Shown piece by piece: positions 1 through 36,800 of a stretch of DNA of 64,000 nucleotides (positions are counted from its first letter, which is position 1; the number at the start of each line of letters is the position of its first letter). The notes below the pieces were generated by a model. The model did not search any database. It was not told where the DNA came from and saw only the letters and a list, made by a program, of their open reading frames with translations. Source of the stretch: Oculina patagonica (taxonomy: Eukaryota); assembly GCF_052425735.1 (NCBI RefSeq), contig NC_135770.1:26164001-26228000 (forward strand), given 5' to 3'. The position numbers and the translations under genes were made by a program.

Positions 1-180
1 TTAGATGATAATACTCCTTACGACTGGCTACAGATTGACTTCGGAAAAGTCATTGAAGTTTGTGGTGTTGCTACTCAGGGAGACATAAATAGCAATGAAT
101 GGCCAATAGAATTCAAGCTGCATTTCTCATCTGATGGTAACAACTTTAAAAGGTATAAAGATGGAAACGGTGCAAAAATG
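1..180 (+). CDS. Gene A exon: F5/8C domain 1, first half (partial)
   Basis: LDDNTPYDWLQIDFGKVIEVCGVATQGD...; donor GTAAG at 181. Confidence 0.88.
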
Positions 181-3100: not shown

Positions 3101-6100
3101 AGGCATGCATCGCTTTTTCTTTTAAGTGTTCGAGTGCAAGAGTAAAGTTTCCCGTTGGGGTTAAACGTGTTCCTAAATACGTGTATTCTTGAACAATTTT
3201 CAATTGATTCAGTGCCTATATTGAAGCTGATGTCAATGGACTTTCTTTGGCGTTTTTGAAATATCATTATTTTTGTTTTCTTTGGATTGATTTTTAGCAT
3301 CCACGTTTCGCAATAGGACGAAAGGACGTTTAAACAGTTCTGCAATCCAACTTTGGATCTTGATAGTATAATCAAATCATCTGCGTACAACAGGGAGTTT
3401 ATTTTTGTTCCATTTGGAAGTACAAATGGATCAGATAGAGTGTTTTCAAATAAATATGGCAAATTATTTATATAGAGATTAAATAAAAGGGGGCTTAGGA
3501 TACACCCTTGAAGTACACCTCGTGAGTATGCGAAAGATCGTGTTTTGTTTTCTCCGACTCTTATTGAGCATGAAGAGTTGCAGTAAAGGCTTTTAATTAA
3601 ATTGTAAAAATTTCCTCCTATGTTCACTTTGAGTAACTTATAAAATAATCCCTCGTGCCAAACGGAGTCGAAAGCTTTGCGGAAATCTACGAAGCAAGCA
3701 TAGATTTTCTCTTTGTGGTAGTGGACATATTTATCTATTAGGGTTCGTAAGGTAAAAACATGGTCTGCAGTGCGGTTTTCAGGCAGAAAGCCAATTTGTG
3801 AATTATGTAAAATCTTGTTGTCTTCAAAATATAAGTATAATCTTTGATTCAGAATGGAACAAAATAGCTTACCAAGACAACTAGAANNNNNNNNNNNNNN
3901 NNNNNNNNNNNNNNNNNNNNNNNNNNNNNNNNNNNNNNNNNNNNNNNNNNNNNNNNNNNNNNNNNNNNNNNNNNNNNNNNNNNNNNNNNNNNNNNNNNNN
4001 NNNNNNNNNNNNNNNNNNNNNNNNNNNNNNNNNNNNNNNNNNNNNNNNNNNNNNNNNNNNNNNNNNNNNNNNNNNNNNNNNNNNNNNNNNNNNNNNNNNN
4101 NNNNNNNNNNNNNNNNNNNNNNNNNNNNNNNNNNNNNNNNNNNNNNNNNNNNNNNNNNNNNNNNNNNNNNNNNNNNNNNNNNNNNNNNNNNNNNNNNNNN
4201 NNNNNNNNNNNNNNNNNNNNNNNNNNNNNNNNNNNNNNNNNNNNNNNNNNNNNNNNNNNNNNNNNNNNNNNNNNNTAGAAGTAGCAGAAACAGTAGCAAT
4301 AGCGGTAGCGGTAGTGGTAGCGATAGTGGTTGTGGTAGTGGTAGTGGTAGTAGTTGTAGTAGTGGTAGTAGTTGTGGTCGCTGTGGTGCTAGAATTTATT
4401 TTGGCAAAAATAAATTGTTTTTCAGCAATTTTATTCAACTAATTAAACTTTTAAGCTACTCTGTGTAATTTTTCGAACCAATGACACAAAGTTTCTCCTT
4501 ATTTATGTAAATTTATTAATTTAATCTCCTCACAAAAGTACCCTTTTACCCCCACGCAAGAGTAGTACAATGCTAACCGTGGAAGGCCTGATTTTTTAAA
4601 AAGTTAATCATAGTATTTTAAAGAAAGTGCAGTTAAAGTTTACCAAGGCCCCTAAATAAAATAGACTCAAGACGCATTTGAACAGCGTTAGTCTCAATAT
4701 GAAGTAAAATATTTGAAAATACAAGCAAGAATTACTGATTTGTAAAATAATACACTGCGGAGAATATGTGAATAGTTCATGTTCTCGCTGATAATTGTAA
4801 ATATTTCACTATGAATCGAGACCAGCCTTGTGCCTATGCATCATTTTCAGCGGCCTTAGTTAATTCAAAACCTGACTATCACATAAAAATGGCATCTTTA
4901 TTGCTTCAAAATAGGTTTAGCATTGTATTATCTATTTCAATCAATCTCTTTATACTGTTAGAATGTCAAAACGCTTTGGGCATGGAGAACAAATTAATAT
5001 CTGGTGGGCAAATCACTGTCTCTTCTACATGGGGTAGCTCTCATCGCGCGAGTTACGCTAGGTTGCGCCTGACGAAACCAAAAGGCTCTTGGGTAGCTGC
5101 CACAAGTGATGCTAGTCCTTGGCTCCAGATTGATCTGGACAGTCAGACCAGGAGTATAAGTAGTTTGTATAGTGTCTTGTCAGGGTGAGAGTAGTTCTAA
5201 AAGGAACTGATGTTGGCGACTGACAATTAGACAACCTGAATGGAAGTCATCTTTAGAGTTAGGGCCAATTGAATTGAATTGCGGGTTGCTCAATGTCAAG
5301 CACGCCGGGCCAGTGGAACGCTTGATCAAGCGGCACTCTTGAAAAAACTTTTTCCTGATTTATCCGATTGAGCTCAAATTTGACACAATGATAGACCTTT
5401 TTATCCCAAACAATCGTATGATTTTTGTTTTTTGAATTATACGGTTTTTGGCGGAAAAATGACGTCACGGTGCTGAAGGAAAATTTTCATTTTATTGTTA
5501 TGATCCAAAAAGTACATTATTCTGAAAGACCTCGCTGAGATAAAGTGAAATGCGAAAAAATTACTGAAAAATCTCAATCCGTCTTGAAGATATAGAGTTT
5601 GAAAATTTGAATTTCCCGCCATTTTGTTACTATTTTTAGAACAATTACAAAATTCAAATCTTTATATCTTCAAGGCGGATTAAATTTTTGAATAATTCTT
5701 TCGCATTTCACTTTATCGTAACGTCTTCTTTCAGAATCGTGTACTTTTGTGCCATAACAAGGGAATAAAAATTTGCCTTTAGTACTGTGACGTCATTTTC
5801 CCGCCAAAAACCGTTAATTCAGAAAAACAAAAATCATTCGATTGTTCATTCGATAAAAAGTTCTATCATTGTGCCAAATTTGAGCTTAATCGGATAAAAC
5901 AGCAAAACGTTTTTCCGAGAGTGCCGCTTCATGCAAGCGCTCTGCTGGCCCGGCGTGAAGTGGAATATTAAGTGCGAATTTCCCCACACAATCGTCGGCT
6001 TACTAGCTGTCGTCGCGAGCGCTATTTCGCACCGATATTTTATCTAATTTTTTTTGTAAGATTTAGATAGATAGTAACTTTATAAACTTGTCAAAATAAC

Positions 6101-9100
6101 CACTTTATTAACGATTTACGATGTTATTGTATAAACAATTAGATCAATTCTTCAATAGTCAACATTTCAAAAGATCATGAAAACGACACCACATAATTTT
6201 CAAGACTTTGTAGTGAACAATTTTCTTCTCGCAGCTCGAGGCAAAATGGTGGAGTAGTACATCACTATAAAGAACATTTGCACATCTGGGGGACAGGGCC
6301 TCTGTAATTCTAAGCAGTTTATCTATACAATGCCCGCCCAAATTCTAACGCTCGTATAGAGCGACTACATTATAAAAGAATGTTGGCCATGGGAAATTTG
6401 GTCGATTTGTTAGTAACCGAAACCTTTAGTTACTTTTGTTTGTTTCTTAGAATTTATATTTGAGGATAAATTTATTTTTAGTTAACGGATATTTAAATTA
6501 ATCTTGCCAGACCTGACTCGTCCCAATTAATCAATACTGCCACAAAACGATATCTGCTTTCCTTAGGTAGATTTATATTAATAAGAAATGCCAGTAAGAC
6601 AATCCCTAACAATTTCTATACTAATTAATTTAGGTTTTTAGTGCAAACACCGACAGCGACACACCCGTTTATCATGAACTCGACCCACCAATCAGGGCAC
6701 GTTATATCCGTTTTGTGCCAGTGTCTTGGTATACCCACAAATCAATGAGGGTGGAGCTCTATGGTTGTCAAGGTACTGTAAAAGGTTTTATAATTTATTA
6801 CATCTTTGCTGCAGCTTATGATACCTAAGACTGGTATAATTTCTATTAAAAGGTAGCGGTCAATTATCAAACGGTTTACCATAATATATCTGGCCACATG
6901 GTATTATATTTACCAACTGAAAAGCAGTGTAGGTAAATGCGTTATTATTAAGCCAAGGAAGTTAGAAAGTCGGCGTTTTTCTGTTACAGTGCTTTAGAAT
7001 TCTCAAGACTGTGTGGGCATAATACCTTACAAGATTTCTATATAAATCTATATAGCCTATGAATACAGGGATCGTACGGTAGGTGTGGCAATATACTTAT
7101 TTGCGTCAATGATCAATTGATGACAAAATCCTAAAGACACGACAGTAAAAAATACTTGTTAAAATTGCCTCAAAATCAAGAACTGTCGTCGAGTTTTGTT
7201 AGAAAACTGCCCCACACTCAAGAACTGTCGTCAAGTTGCGGCATTTAATTTAAACCCTTACCGGCCATAGTTGACTCTTGAGAGAAGACATGGTTTGCCT
7301 AGCCTAGCTCCAACCATGCTCCTAGAAGCTGACAAGACACTTCTTAAAAGGAAGTTTACGATAAAACAATTGGCCCTCGAATAGTGCTTTTAACGCCAGA
7401 ATGCAAGTTATCATCATTTTGACCTCTTTTCTTCGCTTGCATACTGGTAATACATAAAAGGTGCGCATTTATTAATGAGTTTTAAGTTTTCGCTTGTACT
7501 TGTTTCTGCGTAGAGTAAGGCTGACCTATTCGTGAAAATGTTTTAACAATGGCTGATATATATTTCAAATTTCGATACTTTTTGTAATTAGTCCTTTTTT
7601 GATAGATTTTTAAAAGTAAGTAGTAGACTTTTCATTTCATGTAAGTGTCACTCGATAATTCAGTTTCTTTTAACTGCAAAAGAGGTTAAATAAACTATTA
7701 TTACTATATCCGCAGATGTGGACGAATGTCAAAATCTGACACACAATTGCCATGCTGTGCTTGCCCAGTGTAGCAACAATGTTGGTTCATTTGAATGCAC
7801 TTGCCTTCAAGGATACACGGGAGATGGCGTGGATTGCTATGGTATGCATGGGTATTCATCCAATTTTCTTCCTAGGTGAAAGGGAATGGGAAGCTAATAA
7901 CTCTGTTTGAATCCCAACTAGGGATCAAGTTTATGATGTATTACCGAAGTAAACTTTTTCAATGACAAGGAAGGATCCACGATTGAAACATACAGGCTAC
8001 CCGGCTTCTCTCACTATCCTGAAACACTCACCCTCATTTGTTGTTTTGCAGTGGCTTCTAGACCTGCGTCCTGATAATGTAAGGAATGTATGAAGTTTGG
8101 AGGCATGCCACGTGAAACGTTTTACTGCCTCTCGGATGGGGAGTGTATGACAGTGTCTCTTTTTAAATGCTTCTTCCGTTGTAATTCAATATAAAGTTAT
8201 ATTAATATCCAAAATTTTCTCTTACAGATATTGACGAATGTGCAACAGCAACTCACAACTGTCATGGAGTGGCTAACTGTTACAACAATGAAGGTTCTTT
8301 TACCTGCGAGTGCCGAGACGGCTATATTGGCGATGGAATATTGAGTTGCGAGCCCCTCGGTAAGTGCAAATAATGTTTCCAAGGTCTGTAAGCGCGTTCG
8401 TACATTCACCCTTTTCGCGCATCGTATGCAAACAAGGACACTGACTTGCGATTGGATTAAATTCAACTCGCTACAGACTGACAGTCTAATAGACAGACAC
8501 ACAGACGGACGATCAGACAGACTGCTTCAAAGAATGACAGGCTGACTGACTGACTTGTGCTCTAAGTGGCTTGGCTTTTAATTTTTTTTTACTTCTTTCA
8601 TAAATTTCAATCGGCAGGAGACTTCTCAGTAACCATAAGAGACATATCTAAGGACAAGTACCATGCCACTGTTGTCGACCGGTCCGTCAAAAGTGTACAA
8701 GAAGCAATAACGCAAGGTCTAAACAATGATCTCGCTGTGTTGTCAAGTACCATGGAATGGCGTATCATTAGTGAAGCAGAACTTGCTGCTTCAGAGTCAG
8801 CCGATGGAACTTTAGTAAGTCAAGGGACAAATGAGTGGACAATAAACAGGAGATCCATATCCGCTGGTATCTATCAAGTCAAATTCACGGCTACATACAC
8901 AATCGGTGATCTTTCCCACTCAAAGAATGTTACTGCCTTTGACTATGGCTTTATTGAAGTCATTCCTGGTCTAGTACGAGCCGTCATCGACGGAGGAAGT
9001 AGCGTTCGTTGGGGGTCCACGGAAATTGTAACTGTTGACGGCTCATTGAGTTATGATGGAGATATTGGCCCTGGAGATCATACCGGGCTCATTTTTTCTT

Positions 9101-12100
9101 GGTCATGTTTTGATGCGAATGACACTACTGTTATCAGCAATGATTGCTTCGGTTCTTTTGTTGGGGAATTTAATGACTTTTCAAAATCCATTAACATCGA
9201 TCCTGGCCAACTTCAAATTGGCAAAACCTATGTTCTGAGGCTGAATGTTTCCAAAGATGACAGAAGATCGTTTCGGGAAATGACGTTTGAGATAGCAGAA
9301 GGAGAGGTACCCCATGTGTCACTAAGGTAAATGTTAATAGCACACTTTCATTGGGGGGCAAAGCGAAAGACGTTTAGAAAAACAGAGTTGCGTTTTTGGG
9401 CAGGGTAAAGTTATTAAAAATTCATAGTATATGGCACTTATTCGTGCACCATCATGTTTAGCTAATACAACTTGAATGTTGCAGCAAACAATAACCATTT
9501 TTTACATATCTCATCATTGCTTTTCACGCATTGTTAGTTTTTCTCTTCTTCTAGTGAACTCATGTCTTAATTATTAGTCGATAAGTGCAAGTAGGTCCAC
9601 ACTTTACAATATTGTTTCTTTTTTCAATCTATTGTAGATGCTTTGTAGATTGTGGTGTCGTTGTTTCAGCTACCAACAAGCTCCGAGTTACATCAGAATG
9701 CGCAAACTCTCCATGCAATGGCTCAGTTTACCAATGGCGATTAAAAAGATTCAATGACTATTCAAGCAATTGGGATGATGTACCTATATTACCTAACATG
9801 ACTTCAACTGCAGTAGATGCGACTAACATGGTTATCAAGAAGAACTCACTGCAGTCCAAATCCAAATACAGCTTAACGTTATACGTCACACCTCCAGGAG
9901 GAACAGAAGGTTTTGCCGTGCTGGATTTTGAGACAGCTGTGGCACCACACAGCGGGTATTGTACAGTTTCAGTCAGTGAAGGCGTGTCTCTTGAGACCGA
10001 GTTTACCTTCAATTGCTTTGATTGGCAAGATACAAGCAAACTTACTTATGAATTTCAACTTGGAGAAGAGCCAATATCCTATGGCAGCTCTCCACAGTCT
10101 GTGTCGACCGTGTTACCGGCGGGATCTTCAGAAGACGATTACCAACTACAAATCAACATCGTAGTCAAGAATGCTGTCGGTGTAGCGGTTTTAGTTAATC
10201 TTATTGTTAAGGTACCCATAAAATTGTGGATATATTTTCTGTCTTTGACTAACTAATAGGATAAGAACAATAACAATGCGATATATCGTTTCGTGGTATT
10301 CAGTACATACCCATGTATGCAAAATTGAAAAAAAAAAGCAGTCCGTTATTAGGTAATCGCCACTTCTTCATTTCAATCGATCCTTATTAGGGGAATTGAC
10401 CATCCTGTCCCAGATTAGACTCAATGACACACTCGCCTTTTACATCGTTGAATATTATTGGAAGGTCACTTTCAATTATATCAGTATCTTTAGCTCATAT
10501 GTCGTGAAATATATCAACCGCTTAACTTTCAGGTAATGTAAATGTCCGTTACGATAATAGTAACTGGCTCTCGATTAGTGCACGTGATTTACAGCTAGTG
10601 TCATTGGCAAGAACTAAAACATTATTTTATGGGGCAAGGGGAAGGGGGCATCAACAGGTGTCCTTACTAAAAAAAAAACTGGAAGCAACTTTAGTGAATA
10701 TGCACTAAGAAATATCTATAGGCGTACTGACTTCATAAGAAGCCTGATAACTATTTTTCTTGACCATTTGGCTAAAGATAAAAGGTACCGATTACGTAGC
10801 AGATATCTTTTTGATCCTTGCTTTGTTGGCCACTTTTCGGTCGTAGGTTATAGCTTTATTGTTCTTTTGCAGGTCACACCACCGTCCTCGCTTGATCCTT
10901 GCCTTTCATCGCCAGATGCAGTCGCAACCAAGTTAAAAAGCTATGTAATCGGCGAAGGTAATAAGCTAGACGGATTTCTAAACAAAGGCGAACTCAGTCA
11001 AGCTCTTCAGCTCTCCTTGTCCGTCTTGAAGATTGCCAATGAGGAGTCAGATTGTGGACAAACATTGGACCCGGATGTTAAAAAATTGGTGTGTTGACGT
11101 AAACGGTACCATGTTAGTTAATCACTTATCCATGTTACTTTATATAATAACCTGAATTCTACGCGCATTTTGATTGGTTCCTACTTATGATCTATCAGAG
11201 TACAGACACATAGTTGACGTCACGCGGTGGTGTGACTCGTGCGCGTGATCAGAGTTCATTGTCCAAATCAGAGTTGTCGGCAAAGTTTTTAAAACTTGCG
11301 GGGCCACAACAAAGCAAAAAAGTTCAGCTTAATTACAAATCTTCAGTGAGAAACAATACGCCAAGCATCGTTCACCTTTCGAAGCATTTAACTGGGCGAA
11401 ACAAGCTTGAAGAAGACAGTGAACTATTCGAGAAATTATCCGAAATCTGTATGAAAGTTTGACCGGTGTTGTACAGTTGGACGACGCCACGGGAAACAAA
11501 CGAATTGCGGTTGAACGTTTCGGTTATGTTTACAGATTTGAACAACTTTCCAAATTGGAATAAAGGTTAGTTTTTTCATTGACTTTCAATTGACCATTTT
11601 TCTGTTTATTCAATCGGATTAGCAGTGCTTCGTGTTAACGAAAACTTAATGGTGAAATCAAAACAACTTAGCTCATCTTTACGGCGGCATTGCTCAAACT
11701 GAAGGGTGCCGAAGTCTTGTGTTATTATATAAAACAAATAGATTCCATTTTGCCGTGGGTCTGTTCAGTTATAGATCACAGAAGACGTCAAAATGTGGTA
11801 TGAACATCAGTGACCCACTCGGCTAGCGCCTCGTGGGCCACTTCTCTGTTCATACCACATTTTGACGTTATCTGTGATCTATAACTGAACAGACGCACGG
11901 CAAAATGGAATTTATTTGTTAATTGTTAGCTTATCTCTCAACACTTAATTTATTTAAACACAACACTACATCTTTCTTATAGCTCTCACAGAAACAAGTG
12001 TTTTTAAATATTGTTTCTTTACCTTGTTTTTAGATCTCAGAAACATTAATTGTGAAGTTTACAACTATAACACCTGCGAGTCTTGACATGTCTCGCTTGG

Positions 12101-12276: not shown

Positions 12277-15200
12277 TCCTGCCTAGCTGTGCCTGTTGTC
12301 AATTTCGCGCGCAAAATAAGCAAATACATGTAATAGGTTTACCATCACCATCTATCTGCGAATTATTACGAAGTCCATAATGTACGATTTCTTTCATAGG
12401 AATCAACAATGCAGATGACAGAAAAGACAGCAAACATGATTACTGACACCCTTAACGACTTAGAGGAGCCATTTTCTCCTGTTTTGGAGCTGACGGCTAA
12501 GAGTGTTACAGGATGTCTTACAAATGTTCTTCAGTCTGCAGCAGGTGCAGGTAAAGCGGAAGGAGCCTCGCCATCCCCAGAGGTATAACGAATTACCGAA
12601 GTTACTTTCGCAATTGTATATTTACATCTAAACCAAAAAGGCTTTATTGTTTACTCCCTTTTGAATGTAAACATTTTGCGCATTGCTTTTTTCGAAACTA
12701 GAAAAAATGGTTTAAGTATTTTTTATTTTCCGAGCGACATAAACAAAATAATACCTTATTATACCTTATTACATGACATTTTCGCGACACTTTAATTTTG
12801 CGATTTTGAGGAGCGCATATTTAGCGTCATTCAAATTTTGCGATTTTGCGAAAATTAGTATTTTAAATCACTTTAATTTCGCGTTGTTGAGTAAGACCCT
12901 ATTTACATTTCCTTAACAATATCATTCGACGTTTCCTAGGCCTTGAATTAAATAAAACGACTTTATCATAGGAACCACAACGTCAAAATAAGGAACAACG
13001 CAACGGCGGAAAAAAGAGTCAACAGTAACAACAGAACAGTTATCAGTCTTCTTGTTCTCTCCTTGTTCTTGCAGAATCAATTGAATCAATTCTTTCCTTC
13101 AGTACTACTTAACTCGTTCTTTCTTGATTATTGACATAATGCGAGTCGCTAAATTACAGTTAAATTTACGCGTCATGTTATGTTTAGGACACTTACTGTT
13201 CCCGTCACTTATATTTCGCGATTATTTTTGAATCGCAAATTCGCGAAATTAACATGTCGCGAAAATTTCATGAAATAACGCAATCTATTTTATTAGTTTG
13301 AATTTCAAGCATGGAGATTAGTTGCTGAACGACGAAATCTCTCCTTTTTGTTACAGTTCGTAAAAAAGGCTTTAGGTAAATTGAGCAACATGAGCGATGC
13401 ATTCTTTGGCCGCTTGGTTCCAGCTGAAGACCTTGTCATTAAAACAACCAACTTAGCAATATCTCTGAAGAAAGTGTCCGCTGACGATGTAAAGGGACTG
13501 GGTATGGAAGAAGGACCTTCAAAGTTTAAGCTACCAGGCAACCTTGGAGATATGGGTGGTGAAAACATCAATGCAAAGGTAATAGACCGTTTTATTTTTT
13601 TTGCGTTCAAGATCGTGTTGAAGCCTTTGTACAGCACTTTATTTGAGGCGATAAAAAATATTTTGAAATGCTTTTTGAAATATCGTAAACTTCCACAAAA
13701 AGCCTTTCATCATCAAATTCTAATAGACCATAAACCCCCTCTCTATGAATGCGCCATGTTCGTATATTCTTATCTATTAATGAAAGATATACTTTCCCTT
13801 AGCTTGATTTGTGCTTTATGTTGTGCTATTTTTTTATTAGTTTAACAATGAATGCAGGACTTTTGTTCCATATCGTATTTTTTTTTTCAGAACTTTTTTT
13901 TGGCAATGAGCGACTCTTGTATCGCATTTTGCGTGTCCAAGAGAGGCCCGCAACTTCGACCAAACTGCAACGGCCATTATCAAGTGGGCTTAAAATTAAG
14001 AATGCCTGCAATGTAATGCTATAGTGACTTGGTGAAGGTTATTAAACTCGTTATTTAACTCGCGCGCATGGAATTATTTTTAAGTAGTGTTTCTTTGTCA
14101 TTATGAACAGACAACATGGAATATTCATCCCTCGAATAAGTCTGTTTCCTTTTTCAGATGCTGGCTGTTAATTTCAACCCCTTTACATGGGACCAGAGCA
14201 GCAAGAAAGTCAAATCAAGTGTCACCAGTCTCGATCTTCATAGTGGCAATGGGAAAATAATTAATGTTTCAAATCTTGATAATGACATTGAGATAGTTAT
14301 ACCGATTTCCAGTCCACCAAAAAACAACAGTAACGGAACAGAACACAACTTTCTAAAGCCAAACAAAATTTCCATTCGTAGTTATTACGCAGAACTAGCG
14401 GATGTTCCTGTTTCTATTAAAGTCGGTGTGCAGGAAGAAGGCGCAGTTATTGAATTGTTTGTTAAATTTGGATCAAGACCTACGATCGAAGACTCTGACC
14501 ACAACTTTACTGTTACATCAACATGTTCAAACCAAACAGATGACAAGCATAACGAAACATCCTGCCTTCCTGAAGAGAGTTCCGTAACAGTTGTCCCACC
14601 TGAGCCAGGTCGTCTCTATGTTGGTCTGTTGTTTTTGGGAGCTAATACTACAACTGAACATTCCAGGAGGCGAAGATCATGTTTTGGCCATGTTCGTGAA
14701 AGACGGTCATGTGTTGGCTTCAAGGATCCGCCACCTAAAGGAGTCTATAAAACGGATGTTCCACAATATGACCCATTAACAGATGTTAACTACACGTTCA
14801 CTATTAGCCAATCAAGTTGCTTGTATTGGTCTGAAGATAAAGAGAAGTGGACCTCCGATGGCTGCAAGGTAAATTAAATTAACGTCATGTCTTTAGTCAT
14901 CTTTTCATTCTGGTTAAAAAATGACTAAGATCAGGAGCTTCCATCTCACCAGAAAAGGATATGTTTAGATCTAGTTTCAGATAAGTCATCGATCAACGTT
15001 CCTACTGAACTCGTTTCCGGGGTGCTTAAAGGTTTAGACAGGGATCGAAGGAGGCGCTGACAATACTGAAATATAATACCTGTTGTCATTGCAAACAGAT
15101 GTAATGAGAAAACCTCGATCAGACTTCTGGCAGAAATAGAAGATCAAGCGAATAAAACATACAATCAATGTTCCTCTTCTAAACACTGTTACTGACAAAT

Positions 15201-18200
15201 CATGTTTCTTCCGAAAATAGGTCGACGCCAGTTCAAACACCACCCATCTTAAATGTCTGTGCAATCATTTGACGTCCTTTGGTGGAAACTTCATTCAAGC
15301 ACCAAATCCTATTGACTTTGACAAAGTTTTCACTGAGTTTACGCGGCTTGGTGAAACCGGAAATATTTCAGTTCTTGTGACAATTGCGTGTGCTTTCCTC
15401 CTTTACTTTGTTGTATTAATCTTCGCAAGGAGAGCCGACAAGAGGGACGAAAATAAGGTACATCAGTGATGGTATTACAGTTCTATGACATTACATATTT
15501 AAGCTCATAATATAAAATTATAGAGAGCACAGTCGTTAGTAAGCGTAAGCGATCGCGAATTGCGTGAAATAACATCTTATTATATGTTTATTTCAGATTT
15601 CCCCTCCTAAACATGTGAACATCGTTGAAGAAGGAACCTACTTTTACGACATGGTAATCAGCACTGGAGTCTGGAAACACTCAGCAACAACAGCCAGTGT
15701 AACGATCAGCATAAAAGGCGAAAATAACGAACACAAGCTTATTCCACTGCGAAGTAAAGAGGATTCAACTGAAATATTTGCGCGAGGAAGTGTGGATGGC
15801 TTTGTCCTCATCACAAACGAATCATTAGGTCCTTTGAAAGAAATAACTTTAGAACACGACAATTCGGGAGATAATCCATCTTGGTTTGTTGAGACAGTGG
15901 TACTCAGAGACAGGCAGACAGAAGAACGATGGGTGTTCCCGATAAATCGATGGCTTGCGTTGGAAAAAGAAGATGGACAAATAGAAGTCACAGTAGACAA
16001 CAAAAGTTCTTCTTCCTTTTCAGGCCAGGTGCGTTCACGCTTTGGAAGAAAAATTGCAGACGGTCATTTGTGGATGTCAGTTGCTGGAAAAGCATGCAGC
16101 AGTACTTTCACTCGTGTGCAGAGAGCCTCGTGTTGTCTTTCAATTCTGTTTAGCGCCATGATTGCCAATGCCATGTTCTATAACATTGGTGGCGAGTCTG
16201 ATGGAGCTATACAGGTTGGACCATTCAAGTTTTCATGGAGACAGATTGTTGTTGGAGTGCAAAGTGGAATCATAGTTGCACCTGTAAACATCTTGATTGT
16301 CCTCTTGTTTAAGTCTAGCCGACCAAGAAAGAAAAAGGGACACAAATATAAAGACATTGACCAAGCCCAAGAACTTGTTGATGAAATAAGTGAAACAGGT
16401 TGCACGTTGCCTCATTTCTGTGTATACATCGGTTGGTTTCTCTGCTTCGTCACAACTCTTACCGCAGCAACGATTACCTTATTTTACAGCTTAATGTGGG
16501 GTAAAGAAGTTGCCGAGCAATGGCTTGCCTCCATTTTGATTTCAAATGGACAAGATATTTTCGTTGTACAGCCAACAAAGGTAATGCTGGCAGTCATTGT
16601 AGTTTCCTTGCTCTTCAGCAGAAGGAATAAGAACACAAGTGATGATTCTGAGGAGGAGAGTAAAGAAAGCGATGCCTATGACGATGACATCGACTTTCTA
16701 AGTGATGATCCTAAACAACGCTTTAAACAAAATCTCTTGGAGAAGATGCGTATGCGAAGCAAAAAAGAGGCTCAGTTGACAGACATAGTGAAGGAAATTG
16801 TCCTTCATTTAATATTTGTGTTTCTCTTGGCTATCGTTTGCTATGGCAACAAGAATGGAAATCGTTTTCTAATGACAACTGCAATACGAAATCCCTTCAC
16901 AAAGTTTGACTTGGTAAGACTTGACTTCGTGACTTGTCTATAACTACTTCTGAAAGTTCTCCTTGCTGGCGAACCCTATTACATGAAATTTTCGCGACAC
17001 GTTAATTTCGCGAATTTCGCGATTCCAAAAAAATCGCGGAATTAAAGTGACGCGAACAATAAGTGTCGCGAACATAACATGGCGCGAAAATTACGTGACT
17101 CAAGTTATGCCAATATTCAAGAAAGAATAAGTTAAATACCAGGAATTTTCAATGTAAATGGATTCTGTGGTCAATTAACTCAAGAACAATAATTCACGTA
17201 CAAGCGTGAATTGCTTGTGGTCATTGTGAGAACTGCTCTGTTAGTCCTGCCGTTGCGTTTTTGTTAATTTTGACGTTATTTTTTTCCTTTGATAAAGTCG
17301 TTTTTTTCATTTAAGGACATGTTAAATAATGCTGCCTAGGAATTTTAAATTGTGTGTTCCTTAAAACGCGAAAATAAAGTGATTTAAAATACAACATTTT
17401 CGCAAAATTGCGAAATTAACGTGTCGCGAAAATTTCATGTAATAAGGTAACTAATAATAAAAATACTACGTTCAAAGTAAGCTCGTCCTTTTAAAGACAT
17501 GTTGACAAGCATTGAATCAGCATGAAAAACATTTTAGGACTTTAAAAGTTACGAAAATCGATAGAGCTCACAAAACAGGTCAACTTTATTCATCCCAAAA
17601 AGGGCCAATTTGTGAGCCTTATTGCTATTATTTTCAACTGGATGTTAAGCCCCCGAAAAGCTTGTGATGTCATCCCAAATTAAATTTAGAGAAAGCTTTT
17701 TGCTTTGCCAACTAAATAAAGTTGCCATTGGAATAGGTACTATTTGCCAGAAAGAACGGTGACTAGAATTGCCGAAGTATTAAGTTCTTTTAAACTTTCT
17801 GACAATTGCTTTTGTATGGGTTGCCTCATAATAGCAAAAAAATGTTGTTTAAAAGCCGTGTCAAATTCCCAAGTCTGAAAACATTTTTTTTTTAATTAAA
17901 GAACATTTATTTTCTTTATTTCAAAGTTTGCATTTTCATCATTCGATAGTTTACTTAACTCAATGGCAAGCTTTCATTCCTTTCAATAGATAAAACACGA
18001 CTTTTCTTTCTCCTTTGTCTACATCTACATCTACATCTACATTTAATATGTTGGTAAGAAGTCCATACGGATATCACACCAACGTCTAAAAATAAGTAAA
18101 AATACAATATGTACATAAGTAAAATACAATATATAATAACTGAAAAATTCTAAATTAATTCTTAAAATCTAAAAATTCTAAAATTATATGGGTAAACCAC

Positions 18201-30800: not shown

Positions 30801-33800
30801 TCCCCGAGAGTCTGGCGGGGCGCGACGCAAAACCGGCCTCCGGGTTTACAAAAATTCTCTCGTACCCGCATTACCCATGGTGCCCGCTCCGCGCGCTGGC
30901 GCGCGCTGAGGAGCTCCGCTATAATTTACTGTTTACAAGAAAAGGAATCTCCATAACACTGTAACATAGCTTGTTACCAACCATTCCCATGAAACGTACA
31001 TTCGGTTGTCTCTGTATGACCGGCTATTGAACATGCATTAAATATCCCATTAATGGGAATTATAAACACAAGGGCCGACCGATTTTTATCAGGACAGTTA
31101 GAGCATCTTGCATTTTGTTTATCACAGACGCATAAAATCGCTATGATCTGCACAAACCTTGTAAAAGAAGGCGAAGCTATCACGAGTGCCTTTATTCATC
31201 AGATATCTGTGATGATCTTTGTCCCCATACGTTACTGTCATTAGCATAACATAGAAGACCATAAAGGCACCAAACTGCCGGGCAAACCTAAAAAATGTCG
31301 CTTTCTGTAATTCATAGGCACGCAGTTCCTTCATATCCTCTGCAAACGATGATCCATCATTTCCATTGATCTTCTCCGGAGACTTGGGCCTACTGAAGAT
31401 TATAATCAGCAAAAGAGTAAAGAATAAAACTTTGCACGGTTGCCAGACAAAAACATCCTTGACACAGGAGACAGCTACAGAAGCAAGCCATTGATCTGCA
31501 ATTTCTTTCCCCCATTGAAGGCTATAAAATACTGTAAAGGTGGCAGAAGACCCTATCGCCGCAATACAGAGCAACCAACCGAGATACACAAAGGCATGTG
31601 GTAACAAAAATGGTTTCTTTTCCCCTTTAGCCGAGGAAGCGTTGTCTTCTTCGTTCTCGTCACTCGTTTTAGCTTTTCTGCGACGGAATAATAGAGTTAT
31701 CAAAACACTTGCTGGGGCAACAATCAACGAACTCTGAAGACCAATAATTACTTGACGTAATGACATCTTCAATGGTCCAATCTGAATCACTTCGTCTGAA
31801 ACTCCAGTCACCTGATAAAACATGGCGTTACATATCATCGCCAGATATAAAAAAGATAAGCAACACGAGGCTCGCTGGACACGTGTAAATGGATTGCGTG
31901 GTGGTCTGGTAACGACAGAGGCCCAAAGATGATAATCTGCCAGGTCTGTTGAAGAGACGGAGTAAAACATGTTTTTTAATCCAGGACCGTGTTGATTTGG
32001 ATCATTGGACATCAGAGTAACCTTGGTCGATCCGTCACCTTTGTGAAGAGCGAGCCAATTGTGGTGGAAGAAATCCCACTTCTCGCCTGTACTTTTATCA
32101 ACAATGCGAACTTGATCCAGAAACCATGAAGAATTCTTCCCAGAATTATCGTGCCACATTTCTATCTTAACTATACTTCCGAGCGAATTCTCAAGATGGA
32201 AAATAAACCTGTCGATGCTGCCTCTTCCAAACATTTTTCTTCCTGGTGGAGAGCTTCCAGTTAAATTCACAGCCTCTACAATGCCTTCGGTGCCGAAGAT
32301 TTTAATGAACACGCTAGCCGTCGACCCAGCATTTCGCCAAACGCCCGTACTTATAGTCACGTCATACTTGCACATGCCATTACCGGTGGGTTTGACGTGT
32401 ACAGCTGGACCCAGCTACCAGGAGGGGAAAAAATTCACATTTAATAACTCTACAATGTCGTTCGTTAATGCTATTCCAATGACATGTATTTTGCCAATAG
32501 TTCAGGCGAAATTACATGAAACGTACTGGGCGCAACATATTACATGCAATAGTATCGATGCTCCGTAAGTAGCAAATCAAACCGTTAAAGGAGCTACGTC
32601 ACAGACATTTTGCAGATTTTTGGTCTTAACTGTTCTGAAGTAGGTGGCAGGTTAACTCATGAAAAACATTATCTTTGAAAATATAAATGAAACTTCAGCT
32701 ATAAAAGCGATATTTTGAAGACGCACGGAAACAACTTGAAACGTTTAGCCTTTTTGCAATCCATTCCCATCCTAGCCATAAACGTTAGCAGTTTTAGTAC
32801 TCTAATAAAGCAATTTGTAGCAAAACCGCTCCATTATTTTTAGGTTTCCTACGACAGAAATAAAAATGTTGGTTCAAATATCTGATAACCTTTTAAAATC
32901 CGTGAAGGAACTCCGTTAACTTAACTTGAGATTAGAAACAATGAAAATGCAGATGAAACAAGTGATGGCTTGATAATTGTTTTAGATGAACCACATTATT
33001 ATTACACTTATTATAAAGGTATTATATTTTAGTTCGCTGTCTGATGTAATAAGAATTATTTTCAATAAGATATTTTTGTTGTTTTCTTCTCTATACATGT
33101 TAATAACGTTTTTTTTAATTTTATTACGATGGATCGAGTGGCACATGGTACACGTACCTTTCTTTCGTCTAGCATATCAGCTTTCCTTGCCCAGATTAAC
33201 ACCAAGAGATAGACGCCAAAAATGGAACAGACCGTTGCAAGAACCACGTAATTCCCAGTTTCTCCAAGTCTGGAGAATTCTGTAATCACTTTGTCGAAGT
33301 CGATCGGATTTGGTGCAATAAGAAAGCCGCCACCAAATGATGTGAGATGATTACATCGGCACTGGAGTTGTTCGTCATCCGTGTCATCTCCAACCTAAAT
33401 AAAAACACACAAAAGTTCCAAGAGTTTGAACATTCTATAAATCGTACGGGCCAAAACGTATCAGTCGATGGTTTTTGTGATGATATATGCTACAGGCTCA
33501 GCAGTTTGGTAACGTAAACCGAAGGTTTCTTTCGTTTAATTAAGTCTCTTCATCGTGACCTGTTGGTCAGATCTGTTTGTTTTTTTGTTTGTTTGTTTGT
33601 TTGTTTTCCTTAATTGATTTGGCATAACTCTAGCACACCAAAAACCCCTTCTTTTTTATTTCTCACTTGAGCCTTGCAAAGAAACTCGCACTCAAGTTGT
33701 CGTGATCGGCATGTCATTTACCAGCACTAGCTTTTCTTAATACTAGAGGATGTAAGGTGAACTCAAATTATTTTATTTACGCTCCTTGGTTAATGTTCAA

Positions 33801-36800
33801 GTGGAAACTAAGACTACAGACCCTGTGTCGCATAAAAACTGTGGGTTTAATTTGTTGTAGATGATACAACAATGCATCATCAATTTCATTCCGTGTTATT
33901 TGGTATTTAAATACGACAACAGTCAAACGACATCAGATGAAAGCCAAGCAAAGGCGTAAGAACTCTTGAAATACTTGGTTCGTAATAGTGGTATTCTCAT
34001 CTGTCCATCTTAATATTTTGTGGCATTATTGTTTCCCATGCACAATACTGACCATAAGTATAGGTGAAGTTGTTTTACGTGGTTCAAGAAATAATTGTAT
34101 ATTTTTTACTAAAGTTATGCATTTCCACTCCCCTTTATATGCTTGACCTACACAATCTGCACCTTATCGTCTTAAGGTGACGCATGAAGAACACGGCTAT
34201 TTTTTCATTCCTCAAATATTACCCTATTTCAGAATAAAACAGCTTAGAATGCTTGCGTTTTAAAAGCCGCGTTGTTTAACCATGCAGCTTACATAGGGTA
34301 GTCACATTTTCTGGCGATCGCTGGCGATAGCTCATTCGATTGCCAACTTTTCTACAAACGTTAAAAAAAGTTTATGTCTGCTGCTCTAGTTTTTGTTACA
34401 ATCTTTAACTAAACTGATTAAGTATTTGATTTTTTTTTCGCGGAGAGTAAGCATGTGGTTGGCGTGGGAAGAATTCCAGGATCAAAGAACAGAATACGGA
34501 GCAAGCAATCTAATGACATTTTAGCATGATCCAATCTTCAACTCCATGAAAATGTATTTATTTTGATGCTTCGTGGCCTCAAAAAAACCGAGCGTTCACT
34601 CTTAAGGGCCTTGTATTAAGGGTGCGGCCCGTTCAGCCAATCAGATTGCAAGTTTTCCTATAAATCAGCCACTGTCTTATGCTTGATTTTAATAGAGTGA
34701 CCATGTTTTATAAGCTTCAAAGTTCTGGCAGACAGGTTTAGTCAAAAACAAAAGCATCATTTTTATGATTCATTTGTAACAAACGTTATTTACTCACCTT
34801 ACAACCATCTTTACTCCACTGGTCCTGCGTCAGTGAAAAGTAGTAGCAGCTGTATTTCTTAACCTTGACGCTGTAGTTCTGATCAGTAGTAGGATTAAAA
34901 ATCAATGTTCTGTTGTACACTGTTCCTTTCACTGGAGGTGGCTTTGGTTCAACACAATCCCTTTTCTGTCTTCTTCTTCCAAAGCACGAACGTCTAACTC
35001 GAGTATGATTCAGCTGACTACGTTCCACGTACAGCACTCCGACATAATACAAACCTGTCTGGTTAAAGTCCTCAGTGGTCATAATCTCGTATGGACTCCT
35101 CGAGCACTTTGCTGCCAATTGACCACTTACGTTGATCCAGTTACAAGAGGAGTAGTCTGGTACAATGGCGGTATAATTGTAGCTGTTCACAGTTGGGCGT
35201 TCTCCAAATTTAACATACACTATCATTACAAGACTGCGGTTTACTGGTTTCACCTCAAGTATCATAGAATCAGAAATATCGGTGAGTAACACCGTGTGGT
35301 ATCGCATCATGAGTGGTCTGACAAAGAAGTTATTCAGTGAAGAGTTTCCAGAATTAAGTGGTATTTTGATGTCGATATCTATGTTGCTTCCTCCAACGGG
35401 TAAAATTTCCCCTTTACTGTCTGTGAATTCAAGACTCAGTATTTCTGACTTTACTTTTTGGTGGCTTTCATGCCACCGGTATGGATTAAAATCCGTACGG
35501 ATCATCTGTAAAAAATTCAACATTCATAAAAATTAATTAATTGATTAATTACTTAATCAATTCATTAATAACAAAATAAAAAACTATATTATTCACAGTA
35601 GTAACTAAAACATAAATATCAACTGTGTAAGCCTCGGCTGCGTCAGCAAGTGAAAGCGTAGAAAGCAGCTCTGAATGAAATACATACCTGTTTTGCAGGC
35701 TAATAATGTTTGATCTATTAGCTGTGTTTCGATTTCTGGAACGCTTACACAATTCGGTCAAGTCGAAATAATTGATCTTAGCTTTAATTACTGGAGAGAA
35801 AAGCATGCCGAACGTTAGAGCGGCAGAATACGAGAGCATTGACAGAGCAATCTATTTTTTTTTATCCTCTTCCGTTTTGCTACATAATAAGGTATAATTT
35901 GTTTAAAAGATCATACTTACATGATATTCAGCTTCTTCCAAGCGTGTATTGTTAAACCCTTCTCTCATATTTTGTGGTAGTACAAAACTCTGGCCCTCTG
36001 ACATGTTTAAACTTTTTTCTTCAAGTCCACATTTGGTATCGCGACCCAGCATGACATCCATGCCAGGGACCTGTAGCCTTTTGGGAGACTGAGATACCGC
36101 TGATCTTATTGCTACAGTATGGAGTAGCGTTCTAATAATGCCCATTGATTCCAGGACAATGTCTCTTGCCTGGAAAAATAAAAAACGAATTTAACTCAAA
36201 TGCTCGCAAAGGTCACCCACAAAATTATTGTATATAACTATTATTACTTATGGTGTCCTGACCCACCAATGCCAGGTGCATAAATGGGTACCGTCGAATG
36301 TAATGCTGGGTGTTAACCCTGCGATGGACAAGCATCCCATTCAGGGGGGAGGGAGTAGATATACTTCTAGTCGCTTCATGCTACTGAAACCGGGACAATC
36401 TGTGGCATGTTAGGCCATCATTCTCGAACGCAGACTTAACCTACTTATGATGGCCTACCTTTAGTTGGTCGGCAGTCATAGCTAAACGGTCCCCAGGCAC
36501 TGCCGCCGCTACGTCTGAAGAGACCCTTAGCAGCTCAACTGTTCCATAAAGTAAGTTATAAACTCCTTGGAAAATAAACTTTTCATCTTTGGCGTTCATA
36601 TTCTTGGCGTTAGAAAGCAGTATATCAGTAATGTTTCTTAATATTTTCGGGAGAATTTCCTGCAAACAATTAATATCAATTATTAGTATAAATCTACTAG
36701 CGTTCTATCACGAATGCTGTTCTCTGATTGGCTACGCTACTCACTATCTATTCTGTTGTAGAAGGTGAGTAGCGAAACAGCGTGCGGTTGTCAACAGAAT

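What the first reader, a model, noticed from the sequence alone, without database searches (positions are those of the whole stretch)
14665..14715. Conserved double furin-like site with flanking cysteines just before the GPS in both paralogues
Gene A has HSRRRR-SCFGHV-RERR-SCV and gene B (34951-35001) has [19 protein letters not shown], within otherwise divergent sequence about 40 aa before the GPS. Both carry two R-X-K/R-R consensus sites, each followed by X-Cys. Inference: proprotein convertase processing could excise a 10-residue SCFG peptide that stays disulfide-tethered or is released. This would add a second cleavage step to GAIN autoproteolysis and might prime ectodomain shedding or tethered-agonist exposure. 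I do not recognise this motif from vertebrate polycystin GAIN domains.
Basis: partly seen in the sequence, partly recalled or inferred. Interest (0 to 1): 0.7.

Follow-up and report, generated by a model that had tools for sequence, protein, structure and literature searches.

The report
Double furin-type site inside GAIN domain
Two polycystin-1-like receptor genes of the coral Oculina patagonica, and most of their relatives in corals, sea anemones and soft corals, carry two textbook furin-type cutting signals with cysteines in a flexible loop just before the self-cleaving GPS site, which suggests but does not prove a second, enzyme-made cut in this domain.

Summary
Window 14665-14715 (+) encodes RRRR-SCFGHV-RERR-SCV. 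Window 34951-35007 (-) encodes [19 protein letters not shown]. Both lie in the last exon before the GPS exon of two convergent PKD1-like genes (REJ, GAIN/GPS, PLAT, PKD channel).

The genome, Oculina patagonica, holds about 60 copies of this exon. The pattern R-x-[KR]-R-S-C-x(8-10)-R-x-[KR]-R-S-C-[VI]-x-x-K-D-P-P is the most conserved 21-residue stretch of the exon. It occurs in stony corals, sea anemones and an octocoral. The hydrozoan Clytia keeps only the first site and the second Cys. Mollusc, crinoid, amphioxus, sturgeon and rotifer homologues have none of it.

P4, P2 and P1 are fixed as basic residues and P3 varies freely. In 24 full-length proteins, 50 of 57 R-x-[KR]-R motifs in the ectodomain fall in this one loop, against 4.9 expected in total.

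AlphaFold2 puts the motif in a roughly 48-residue coil of low confidence inside a confident GAIN fold. The genome encodes convertase P-domains, and the exon is transcribed and spliced.

Cleavage itself is untested. Release of a free peptide is unlikely, because cysteine co-loss points to disulfide tethering. I rate this a new variant of a known kind, of moderate to good interest.

The parts
14158..14868 (+). Gene A exon encoding most of GAIN subdomain B (237 aa); phase 0 at both ends
   Evidence: Acceptor AG at 14156-57 and donor GT at 14869-70. Contigs of the RNA-like runs X1 and X2 cover the exons only and join 14868 to 15221 across a GT..AG intron. The AF2 model of this exon has pLDDT 82.9.
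14524..14565 (+). Upstream cysteine pair Ca...Cb (C123...C136 of the exon) in a second low-confidence coil
   Evidence: Both are nearly invariant in cnidarians and absent in non-cnidarian homologues. pLDDT is 67 for exon residues 121-140.
14665..14676 (+). Site 1 of gene A, R-R-R-R (P4-P1); predicted scissile bond between 14676 and 14677
   Evidence: Column counts: P4 is R in 84%, P3 is variable, P2 is K/R in 83%, P1 is R in 83%.
14677..14706 (+). The 10 residues S-C-F-G-H-V-R-E-R-R between the two predicted cuts; holds Cys1 (14680-14682)
   Evidence: The spacing from Cys1 to Cys2 is 10-12 residues in 128 of 132 sequences.
14695..14706 (+). Site 2 of gene A, R-E-R-R (P4-P1); predicted scissile bond between 14706 and 14707
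   Evidence: Column counts: P4 is R in 79%, P3 is variable, P2 is K/R in 84%, P1 is R in 79% with almost no K, P1' is Ser in 110 of 159.
14710..14742 (+). Cys2 (14710-14712) and the conserved C-V-x-x-K-D-P-P-P stretch
   Evidence: C185, K189 and P192 are invariant in alignment A1. These columns have the highest information content of the exon.
14818..14865 (+). Start of the GPS motif, C-L-Y-W...W...G-C
   Evidence: Pfam GPS hit on the close paralogue P0174, residues 1506-1544.
15221..15457 (+). Gene A exon with the rest of the GPS (C-L-C-N-H-L^T, HLT at 15266-15274), the Stachel strand and TM1
   Evidence: Pfam GPS, E = 4.2e-05. Sequence. Splice joints 14868>15221 and 15457>15597.
34798..35505 (-). 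Gene B exon homologous to the gene A exon (33% identity)
34990..35001 (-). Site 1 of gene B, R-V-R-R
34960..34989 (-). The 10 residues [10 protein letters not shown] of gene B; site 2 (R-Q-K-R) is 34960-34971
34951..34959 (-). D-C-V of gene B (Cys2 at 34954-34956)
33158..33394 (-). Gene B exon with C-R-C-N-H-L^T (HLT at 33341-33349), the Stachel strand and TM1
   Evidence: Pfam GPS, 21.8 bits, just under the 22.5 cut-off. Sequence.

Best explanation
The motif is a cnidarian-specific, cysteine-stapled insertion. It sits in the loop that joins the last pre-GPS beta-strand of GAIN subdomain B to the first strand of the GPS motif. It carries two canonical proprotein-convertase (furin-type) sites, R-X-K/R-R followed by Ser-Cys. 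Shown: the sites are under strong, position-specific constraint across Anthozoa. They lie in a predicted flexible coil of an extracellular GAIN domain. The host encodes convertases. The exon is expressed. Inferred: during passage through the late secretory pathway a furin-like convertase cuts after one or both sites. Together with GPS autoproteolysis this would turn the GAIN domain into a three- or four-chain assembly: the large N-terminal part, a 10-residue piece, a GPS cap of about 70 residues, and the membrane-bound C-terminal fragment. Further inferred from cysteine co-loss: Cys2 is bonded to the upstream Cb, and Cys1 probably to Ca. In that case the pieces stay covalently tied to the N-terminal part. 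The cut would then nick and loosen the loop rather than release a peptide. Any effect on shedding or on exposure of the tethered agonist is conjecture.
For: (1) Both genes hold the double site at the stated places. (2) About 60 paralogous exons in the genome keep it down to 27% identity. It occurs in Oculina, Stylophora, Montipora, Acropora, Desmophyllum, Nematostella, Actinia, Actinostola and Dendronephthya. On a tree of 135 rows, 91 have both strict sites, and the losses are confined to a few subfamilies. (3) Unbiased column counts show R at P4 and P1, with K nearly excluded at P1, K/R at P2, free P3 and Ser at P1'. Information content dips exactly at the two P3 columns. (4) 50 of 57 ectodomain R-X-[KR]-R motifs in 24 proteins lie in this loop, against 4.9 expected in total. 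(5) The AF2 model of the whole GAIN domain of a paralogue about 87% identical in this exon (P0174:1030-1562) has pLDDT 87.8. Its top Foldseek hits are GAIN domains 4DLO, 4DLQ and 8OEK at probability 1.00. The motif is in coil 419-466 with pLDDT 54-73. The model of gene A's own exon agrees: coil 161-209, pLDDT 57-64. (6) 25 loci in the genome score above the Pfam cut-off for the convertase P-domain PF01483. (7) Exon-only contigs with GT..AG joints show that the exon is transcribed. (8) In the subfamily whose site 1 is no longer strict, most members keep the minimal R-X-X-R. (9) From my own knowledge: furin tolerates disulfide-bonded Cys right after the cut (pro-endothelin-1, RSKR then CSC), and it cuts inside disulfide-closed loops (integrin alpha chains).
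Against: There is no biochemical evidence of cleavage, and no tool here gives it. A Cys at P2' held in a disulfide, and an N-glycosylation sequon within 14 residues upstream of site 1 in 49 of 83 sequences, could hinder a convertase. The cysteine connectivity is not settled: three Clytia paralogues keep Ca, Cb and Cys2 but lack Cys1, which leaves an odd cysteine under either pairing. The many paralogues are not independent samples. The conservation argument therefore rests mainly on the depth of the tree and on the taxa covered.
Confidence: 0.6

Rival explanations
1. The loop is never cut. It is a disulfide-stapled basic patch that binds an anionic partner, such as sulfated glycans (the ligands of sea urchin REJ proteins) or acidic matrix proteins, or that makes an intramolecular contact.
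For: The loop has four to eight Arg/Lys in 20 residues next to two conserved cysteines and a Pro-rich stalk. PKD1-like ectodomains occur in the acidic organic matrix of coral skeleton. No cleavage has been shown.
Against: A charge patch would let K and R interchange and would tolerate shifts of register. Here P1 is R with almost no K, P3 is free, P1' is Ser, and the register relative to each Cys is fixed. Hydrozoan paralogues replace site 2 with an acidic stretch but keep site 1 as R-K-R-R or R-R-R-R. That fits a cleavage site better than a binding surface.
Confidence: 0.2
2. The sites are cut, but by an extracellular trypsin-like or matrix protease at the cell surface and in a regulated way, not constitutively by a Golgi convertase. 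Alternatively only one of the two sites is used.
For: Coral skeleton proteomes hold secreted proteases together with ectodomain-only peptides of membrane proteins, including a PKD1-related protein. Site 1 is relaxed to R-X-X-R in one subfamily and site 2 is absent in two others, so one cut may be enough.
Against: The full four-residue consensus with Arg at P4 is specific to kexin/furin-type convertases. Simple trypsin-like enzymes need only P1. Conservation of P4 and P2 would be unexplained.
Confidence: 0.12
3. The resemblance between genes A and B is chance or shared ancestry without function.
For: The paralogues descend from one ancestor, so a shared motif is not in itself surprising.
Against: The motif is the most conserved window of an exon that has otherwise drifted to 27-35% identity. 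It is kept across Hexacorallia and Octocorallia. R-X-[KR]-R is about ten times over-represented, and only in this loop.
Confidence: 0.02

Closest known systems
GPS autoproteolysis of the GAIN domain in polycystin-1 and sea urchin suREJ3
   Same: Same protein family and same domain. Both window genes keep C-x-C-N-H-L^T-S-F-G-G. As with the GPS cut, the fragments would stay associated after cleavage.
   Different: GPS cleavage is self-catalysed at HL^T. The sites here are enzyme-recognition motifs about 70 residues upstream, in a loop that non-cnidarian family members lack.
Furin or convertase sites in ectodomains of GAIN-bearing adhesion GPCRs (ADGRG6/GPR126, ADGRB2/BAI2, ADGRB1/BAI1)
   Same: A convertase cut in the extracellular region of a receptor that also has a GAIN domain.
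   Different: [quoted passage not shown] The GPR126 site is also single and, from my own knowledge, lies in the SEA domain. Here two sites sit inside GAIN subdomain B, next to the GPS motif.
Fibrocystin/polyductin convertase cleavage (KRKR, residue about 3613-3616)
   Same: A cystoprotein whose ectodomain is cut at a putative convertase site and stays attached to the membrane stalk by disulfide bonds.
   Different: It is an unrelated protein, with a single site and no GAIN domain.
Dual furin excision of an inhibitory tract in ENaC alpha/gamma, and of p27 in RSV F (own knowledge)
   Same: Two basic sites in one exposed loop, and maturation by removal or freeing of the intervening peptide. ENaC is also an ion-channel complex.
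   Different: The intervening peptides there are 26-43 residues long, lack cysteine and are released. Here the piece is 10-12 residues and holds a conserved Cys that probably tethers it.
Convertase cuts inside disulfide-closed loops or next to bonded cysteines (integrin alpha heavy/light chains, pro-endothelin-1; own knowledge)
   Same: Cleavage nicks a chain whose halves remain disulfide-linked. Cys close to the scissile bond is tolerated.
   Different: These are different folds and functions. They serve only as precedent for feasibility.

Membership tests
Polycystin-1 (PKD1-like / REJ) family | REJ domain in the ectodomain | tested here: met
   Pfam REJ, E = 8.2e-29, on window 8566-9327. REJ at 644-1077 in the close paralogue P0174.
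Polycystin-1 (PKD1-like / REJ) family | GAIN fold ending in a GPS motif with HL^T before TM1 | tested here: met
   Pfam GPS on both genes (gene B scores 21.8 bits against a cut-off of 22.5). CLCNHLT and CRCNHLT are read directly from the sequence. The AF2 model of P0174:1030-1562 matches GAIN domains 4DLO, 4DLQ, 8VTI and 8OEK at probability 1.00.
Polycystin-1 (PKD1-like / REJ) family | PLAT domain after TM1 and a C-terminal polycystin/PKD channel module | tested here: met
   PLAT, Polycystin_dom and PKD_channel on exon translations of both genes.
Proprotein-convertase (furin-type) substrate | R-X-K/R-R consensus with a small or polar P1' | tested here: met
   Gene A has RRRR|S and RERR|S; gene B has RVRR|S and RQKR|D.
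Proprotein-convertase (furin-type) substrate | The site faces the lumen of the secretory pathway or the extracellular space | tested here: met
   The site is N-terminal to TM1, inside the GAIN domain of a type-I-oriented ectodomain. This is inferred from the domain order.
Proprotein-convertase (furin-type) substrate | The site lies in an accessible, flexible segment | tested here: inconclusive
   Two AF2 models show coil with pLDDT 54-73. No coordinates were available, so solvent accessibility was not computed.
Proprotein-convertase (furin-type) substrate | A convertase is present in the organism | tested here: met
   25 loci of the genome score above the Pfam cut-off for the P_proprotein domain PF01483.
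Proprotein-convertase (furin-type) substrate | Cleavage demonstrated | not testable with these tools
   This needs expression with inhibitor or mutants, or N-terminomics. The public coral proteomes are tryptic and cannot tell a convertase cut from a trypsin cut.
Dual-site excision switch (ENaC / RSV F type) | Two convertase sites in one loop | tested here: met
   The two P1 residues are 10-12 residues apart in nearly all anthozoan members.
Dual-site excision switch (ENaC / RSV F type) | The intervening peptide is released | tested here: inconclusive
   The peptide holds Cys1. In one subfamily Cys1 and the upstream Ca are lost together, which argues for a Ca-Cys1 bond and so for tethering. Clytia does not fit cleanly.
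Heparin / sulfated-glycan binding motif (Cardin-Weintraub type) | A basic cluster whose charge matters but not the residue identity or register | tested here: not met
   K is nearly excluded at P1, P3 is free, and the register relative to the cysteines is fixed.

The most novel reading that the evidence does not exclude
In cnidarians the GAIN domain of PKD1-like receptors matures by two obligatory steps: convertase cuts in the pre-GPS loop plus GPS autoproteolysis. The roughly 70-residue GPS cap that covers the tethered-agonist strand then becomes a separate mini-chain, held only by one disulfide (Cb-Cys2) and by beta-sheet contacts. That would create a redox- or force-sensitive latch that sets the threshold for loss of the ectodomain (found in coral skeleton matrix) and for exposure of the agonist strand. 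The latch would have arisen at the base of Cnidaria (site 1 plus Cys2) and been doubled in Anthozoa before the large expansion of the family.
Probability: 0.2. Interest if true: 0.75.

Novelty: new variant of a known kind. Interest (0 to 1): 0.55.

Why it matters
GAIN domains control activation of adhesion GPCRs and polycystin-1, and the only cut known inside them is the self-made GPS cut. A conserved enzyme-recognition site inside the domain, right beside the GPS motif, would add a second, regulatable processing step. It would also give a natural system for asking how the integrity of the GPS cap governs ectodomain loss and exposure of the tethered agonist.

It concerns a very large receptor family: about 60 copies in this coral and many in every anthozoan checked. 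Some ectodomains of that family are found occluded in coral skeleton. How those ectodomains leave the cell is an open point in coral biomineralisation, and so far only the GPS site and chymotrypsin-like sites have been proposed.

The prediction is cheap to test.

Tried and rejected
- **Pfam:** no family matched either motif exon at E <= 0.01, so no named domain explains the loop.
- **Literature:** searches for furin or convertase together with polycystin, PKDREJ, REJ, GPS or GAIN found no paper describing such a site in PKD1-family GAIN domains. The library is limited to open-access papers, so this is not proof of novelty.
- **Disulfide connectivity from the models:** the structure tool returns no coordinates, so I could not read it from the AF2 models.
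- **Disulfide connectivity from covariation:** presence/absence covariation gives a consistent Cb-Cys2 pair and a probable Ca-Cys1 pair. Three Clytia paralogues break the simple scheme.
- **Intra-loop Cys1-Cys2 bond:** Cys2 stays invariant in whole subfamilies that have lost Cys1.
- **Amidated-peptide precursor:** rejected. The Gly is at P5, not directly before the basic pair.
- **Chance:** rejected.
- **Gene A's own annotated protein:** the length window of the search for homologous proteins did not return it. I therefore folded a paralogue about 87% identical in this exon for the whole domain, and gene A's own exon separately.
- **RNA runs:** runs X1 and X2 are labelled RNA only as a guess. 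Their exon-only coverage and GT..AG joints, absent from the DNA-like runs X13 and X16, are the basis for calling them transcripts.
- **Complex prediction:** none was run, because no binding claim is made.
Full report
**What is at the coordinates**

Window 14659-14715 on the + strand reads H-S-R-R-R-R-S-C-F-G-H-V-R-E-R-R-S-C-V. Window 34951-35007 on the - strand reads [19 protein letters not shown].

Each stretch holds two R-X-[KR]-R motifs, each followed by X-Cys. The second Cys lies 36 residues before the first cysteine of the GPS motif (C-x-x-W...W...G-C) and about 70 residues before the HL^T bond.

**The genes**

The stretches lie in homologous exons: 14158-14868 (+) and 34798-35505 (-). 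They belong to two convergent genes.

Pfam finds REJ, GPS, PLAT, Polycystin_dom and PKD_channel on exon translations of gene A. On gene B it finds GPS, PLAT, Polycystin_dom and PKD_channel. Both are therefore polycystin-1-like receptors with a GAIN/GPS module before the first membrane span.

The next exon of each gene carries the GPS: [11 protein letters not shown] in gene A and [11 protein letters not shown] in gene B.

The contigs of two RNA-like public runs cover the exons of gene A only. They join 14868 to 15221 and 15457 to 15597 across GT..AG introns. Two DNA-like runs cover the introns and show no such joints. The exon is therefore transcribed and spliced as modelled, and one contig spans the motif itself.

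**The organism and the size of the family**

Database proteins that sit on a contig of exactly the length of this window's contig are named Oculina patagonica, a stony coral.

A six-frame search of the 529-Mb genome with the gene A exon gave 73 matches. That is about 60 copies of this exon. Many lie in tandem arrays on contigs C13, C8, C7 and C4, and their identity to gene A runs from 100% down to 27%.

**Conservation within the genome**

In an alignment of these copies, almost all keep the pattern R-x-[KR]-R-S-C-x(4-5)-R-x-[KR]-R-S-C-[VI]-x-x-K-[DP]-P-P. Genes A and B are only 33% identical over the exon.

In a 21-sequence alignment, four of the nine invariant columns of the exon (R173, C185, K189, P192) lie in this loop. 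So do five of the sixteen nearly invariant columns.

**Conservation beyond the genome**

A profile of the exon found 809 proteins at E <= 0.001 among 1.84 billion representatives. Many carry the double site.

Named full-length proteins with both sites come from:
- Scleractinia: Stylophora, Montipora, Acropora, Desmophyllum and Oculina;
- Actiniaria: Nematostella, Actinia and Actinostola;
- Octocorallia: Dendronephthya.

Four paralogues from the hydrozoan Clytia or a close relative keep the first site (R-K-R-R or R-R-R-R), the second Cys and the Pro run. In place of site 2 they have an acidic stretch.

Homologues from a mussel, an abalone, a crinoid, amphioxus, a sturgeon record and a rotifer have a shorter loop there, with no basic sites. 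Most of them also lack all four cysteines.

On a maximum-likelihood tree of 135 rows, 91 have both strict sites. Losses are confined to a few subfamilies. In the subfamily whose site 1 is no longer strict, most members retain R-X-X-R.

**Is the pattern that of a convertase site?**

I counted residues at fixed offsets from each Cys, without using any motif to select the sequences.
- Site 2: P4 is R in 79%, P3 is variable (Q, E, R, K, S, V, M), P2 is K or R in 84%, P1 is R in 79% with almost no K, and P1' is Ser in 110 of 159.
- Site 1: P4 is R in 84%, P3 is variable, P2 is K or R in 83%, and P1 is R in 83%.

Information content per column dips at exactly the two P3 positions. The window R172-P192 is the most conserved 21-residue window of the whole exon.

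In 24 full-length anthozoan proteins, composition predicts 4.9 R-X-[KR]-R motifs in 33,644 ectodomain residues. There are 57. Fifty lie in this loop and seven elsewhere.

This is the signature expected of recognition by a kexin/furin-type convertase. A plain charge patch would not produce it.

**Structure**

AlphaFold2 on the GAIN region of P0174, an Oculina paralogue about 87% identical to gene A in this exon, with 110 aligned sequences, gave mean pLDDT 87.8 and pTM 0.83. The model has eight helices followed by a beta-sandwich. Its best Foldseek matches in the PDB are the GAIN domains of BAI3, latrophilin-1, latrophilin-3 and BAI2, at probability 1.00.

The motif is residues 424-442 of that model. 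It lies within a coil from 419 to 466, between the strand I-R-I-Y-V-G-L-L-F-L-G-A and the first GPS strand. Block pLDDT there is 54-73.

A second model, of gene A's own exon, agrees: coil 161-209 with pLDDT 57-64. The only other low-confidence coil of that model is the segment that holds the upstream cysteines Ca and Cb.

**Cysteine connectivity**

The exon has six conserved cysteines. By analogy with solved GAIN domains, the two in the GPS start pair with the two in the next exon. That leaves Ca (C123), Cb (C136), Cys1 (C175) and Cys2 (C185).

One subfamily (six Oculina copies and related database sequences) has lost Ca and Cys1 together and keeps Cb and Cys2. Some of its members have only Cb and Cys2 left. 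Cys2 and Cb are the two most constant of the four.

This favours Cb-Cys2 and Ca-Cys1 bonds over an intra-loop Cys1-Cys2 bond. However, three Clytia paralogues keep Ca, Cb and Cys2 without Cys1, so the scheme is probable rather than settled.

If it holds, both cuts would leave every piece tied to the N-terminal part. The 10-residue piece would not be set free.

**Enzyme and context**

Twenty-five loci of the genome score above the Pfam cut-off for the convertase P-domain.

In the papers I could search, convertase sites in GAIN-bearing receptors lie outside the GAIN domain. [quoted passage not shown] GPR126 also has a furin site; that it lies in the SEA domain is my own recollection.

Fibrocystin, another cystoprotein, is cut at a putative convertase site and its halves stay disulfide-linked.

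Coral skeleton proteomes contain ectodomain peptides of PKD1-related proteins. The authors invoke the GPS site or chymotrypsin-like sites for their release, not a convertase site in these proteins. The subfamily with PKD repeats (PF00801/PF18911), the domain type reported for those skeleton proteins, also carries the double site (Montipora, Stylophora, Nematostella and Dendronephthya rows).

I found no description of this motif.

**Verdict**

The convertase reading is the best explanation, at about 0.6, but it rests on sequence logic and predicted flexibility only.

Release of a free peptide is unlikely. A role in shedding or in agonist exposure is open.

This is a new variant of known kinds of processing, in a domain where no enzyme-made cut has been reported in the literature I could search.

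Noticed in passing
G000 contigs C13 (0.7-1.0, 4.2, 19.8, 23.8 and 25.5-27.3 Mb), C8 (24.19-24.45 Mb), C7 (0.4-0.8 and 15.3-15.4 Mb), C4 (26.6-26.85 Mb), C1, C12: There are about 60 copies of the GAIN-B exon of PKD1-like genes in one coral genome, mostly in tandem arrays. This is a very large lineage-specific expansion of this receptor family.
   Followed up: partly
window 14722-14760 and homologous positions in relatives: Right after Cys2 comes a conserved K-D-P-P run. In many subfamilies it continues as T/P-rich P-P-T-T-P-P-P-T-P (45 of 83 sequences have at least 5 Pro and at least 2 Ser/Thr in 20 residues). This looks like a mucin-type O-glycosylation stalk. O-glycans near convertase sites are known to modulate cleavage (own knowledge).
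   Followed up: partly
window 14644-14664 (A-N-T-T-T-E-H) and 35002-35013 (L-N-H-T): 49 of 83 double-site sequences have an N-x-S/T sequon within 14 residues upstream of site 1, most often 5-9 residues before P4. In gene B it is only 3 residues before (N-H-T-R-V-R-R). A glycan there could gate access to site 1.
   Followed up: partly
L040-L044, L052 (G000:C13:26.67-26.91 Mb and C1417): One subfamily has lost Cys1, Ca and site 2 together but keeps site 1 (R-G-R-R-S). Most of its members gained two new cysteines between Cb and the next strand. This is a natural variant for testing the disulfide scheme.
   Followed up: partly
window 1-231 (+) and 1527-2021 (+): These ORFs resemble F5/8 type C (discoidin) domains and are probably N-terminal modules of gene A. 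The close paralogue P0174 has three F5/8C domains and an EGF domain before the REJ domain. Masked N runs lie at about 1712-2000 and 3885-4275 and were left alone.
   Followed up: partly
window 2109-3215 (-): Two adjoining ORFs (134 and 234 aa) look like the tail of a retroelement polymerase, inside or beside gene A's 5' region. They were not searched.
   Followed up: no
window 29400-30950: A purine-rich block of raised G+C (up to 0.63 against 0.38 for the window; AT skew up to 0.72) has long open frames on both strands. It lies in an intron of gene B, downstream of the PLAT exon. Only a short 25-26-base tandem repeat was found at 29584-29650.
   Followed up: partly
window 41637-42020, 46089-46478, 49158-49409, 52493-53134, 53566-53808 (all -): There are repeated exon pairs on the - strand upstream of gene B. 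One kind has a calcium-binding EGF-like pattern. The other begins like a von Willebrand A domain ([11 protein letters not shown]). They are either N-terminal cassettes of gene B or a separate gene with duplicated VWA-EGF units. They were not scanned against Pfam.
   Followed up: no
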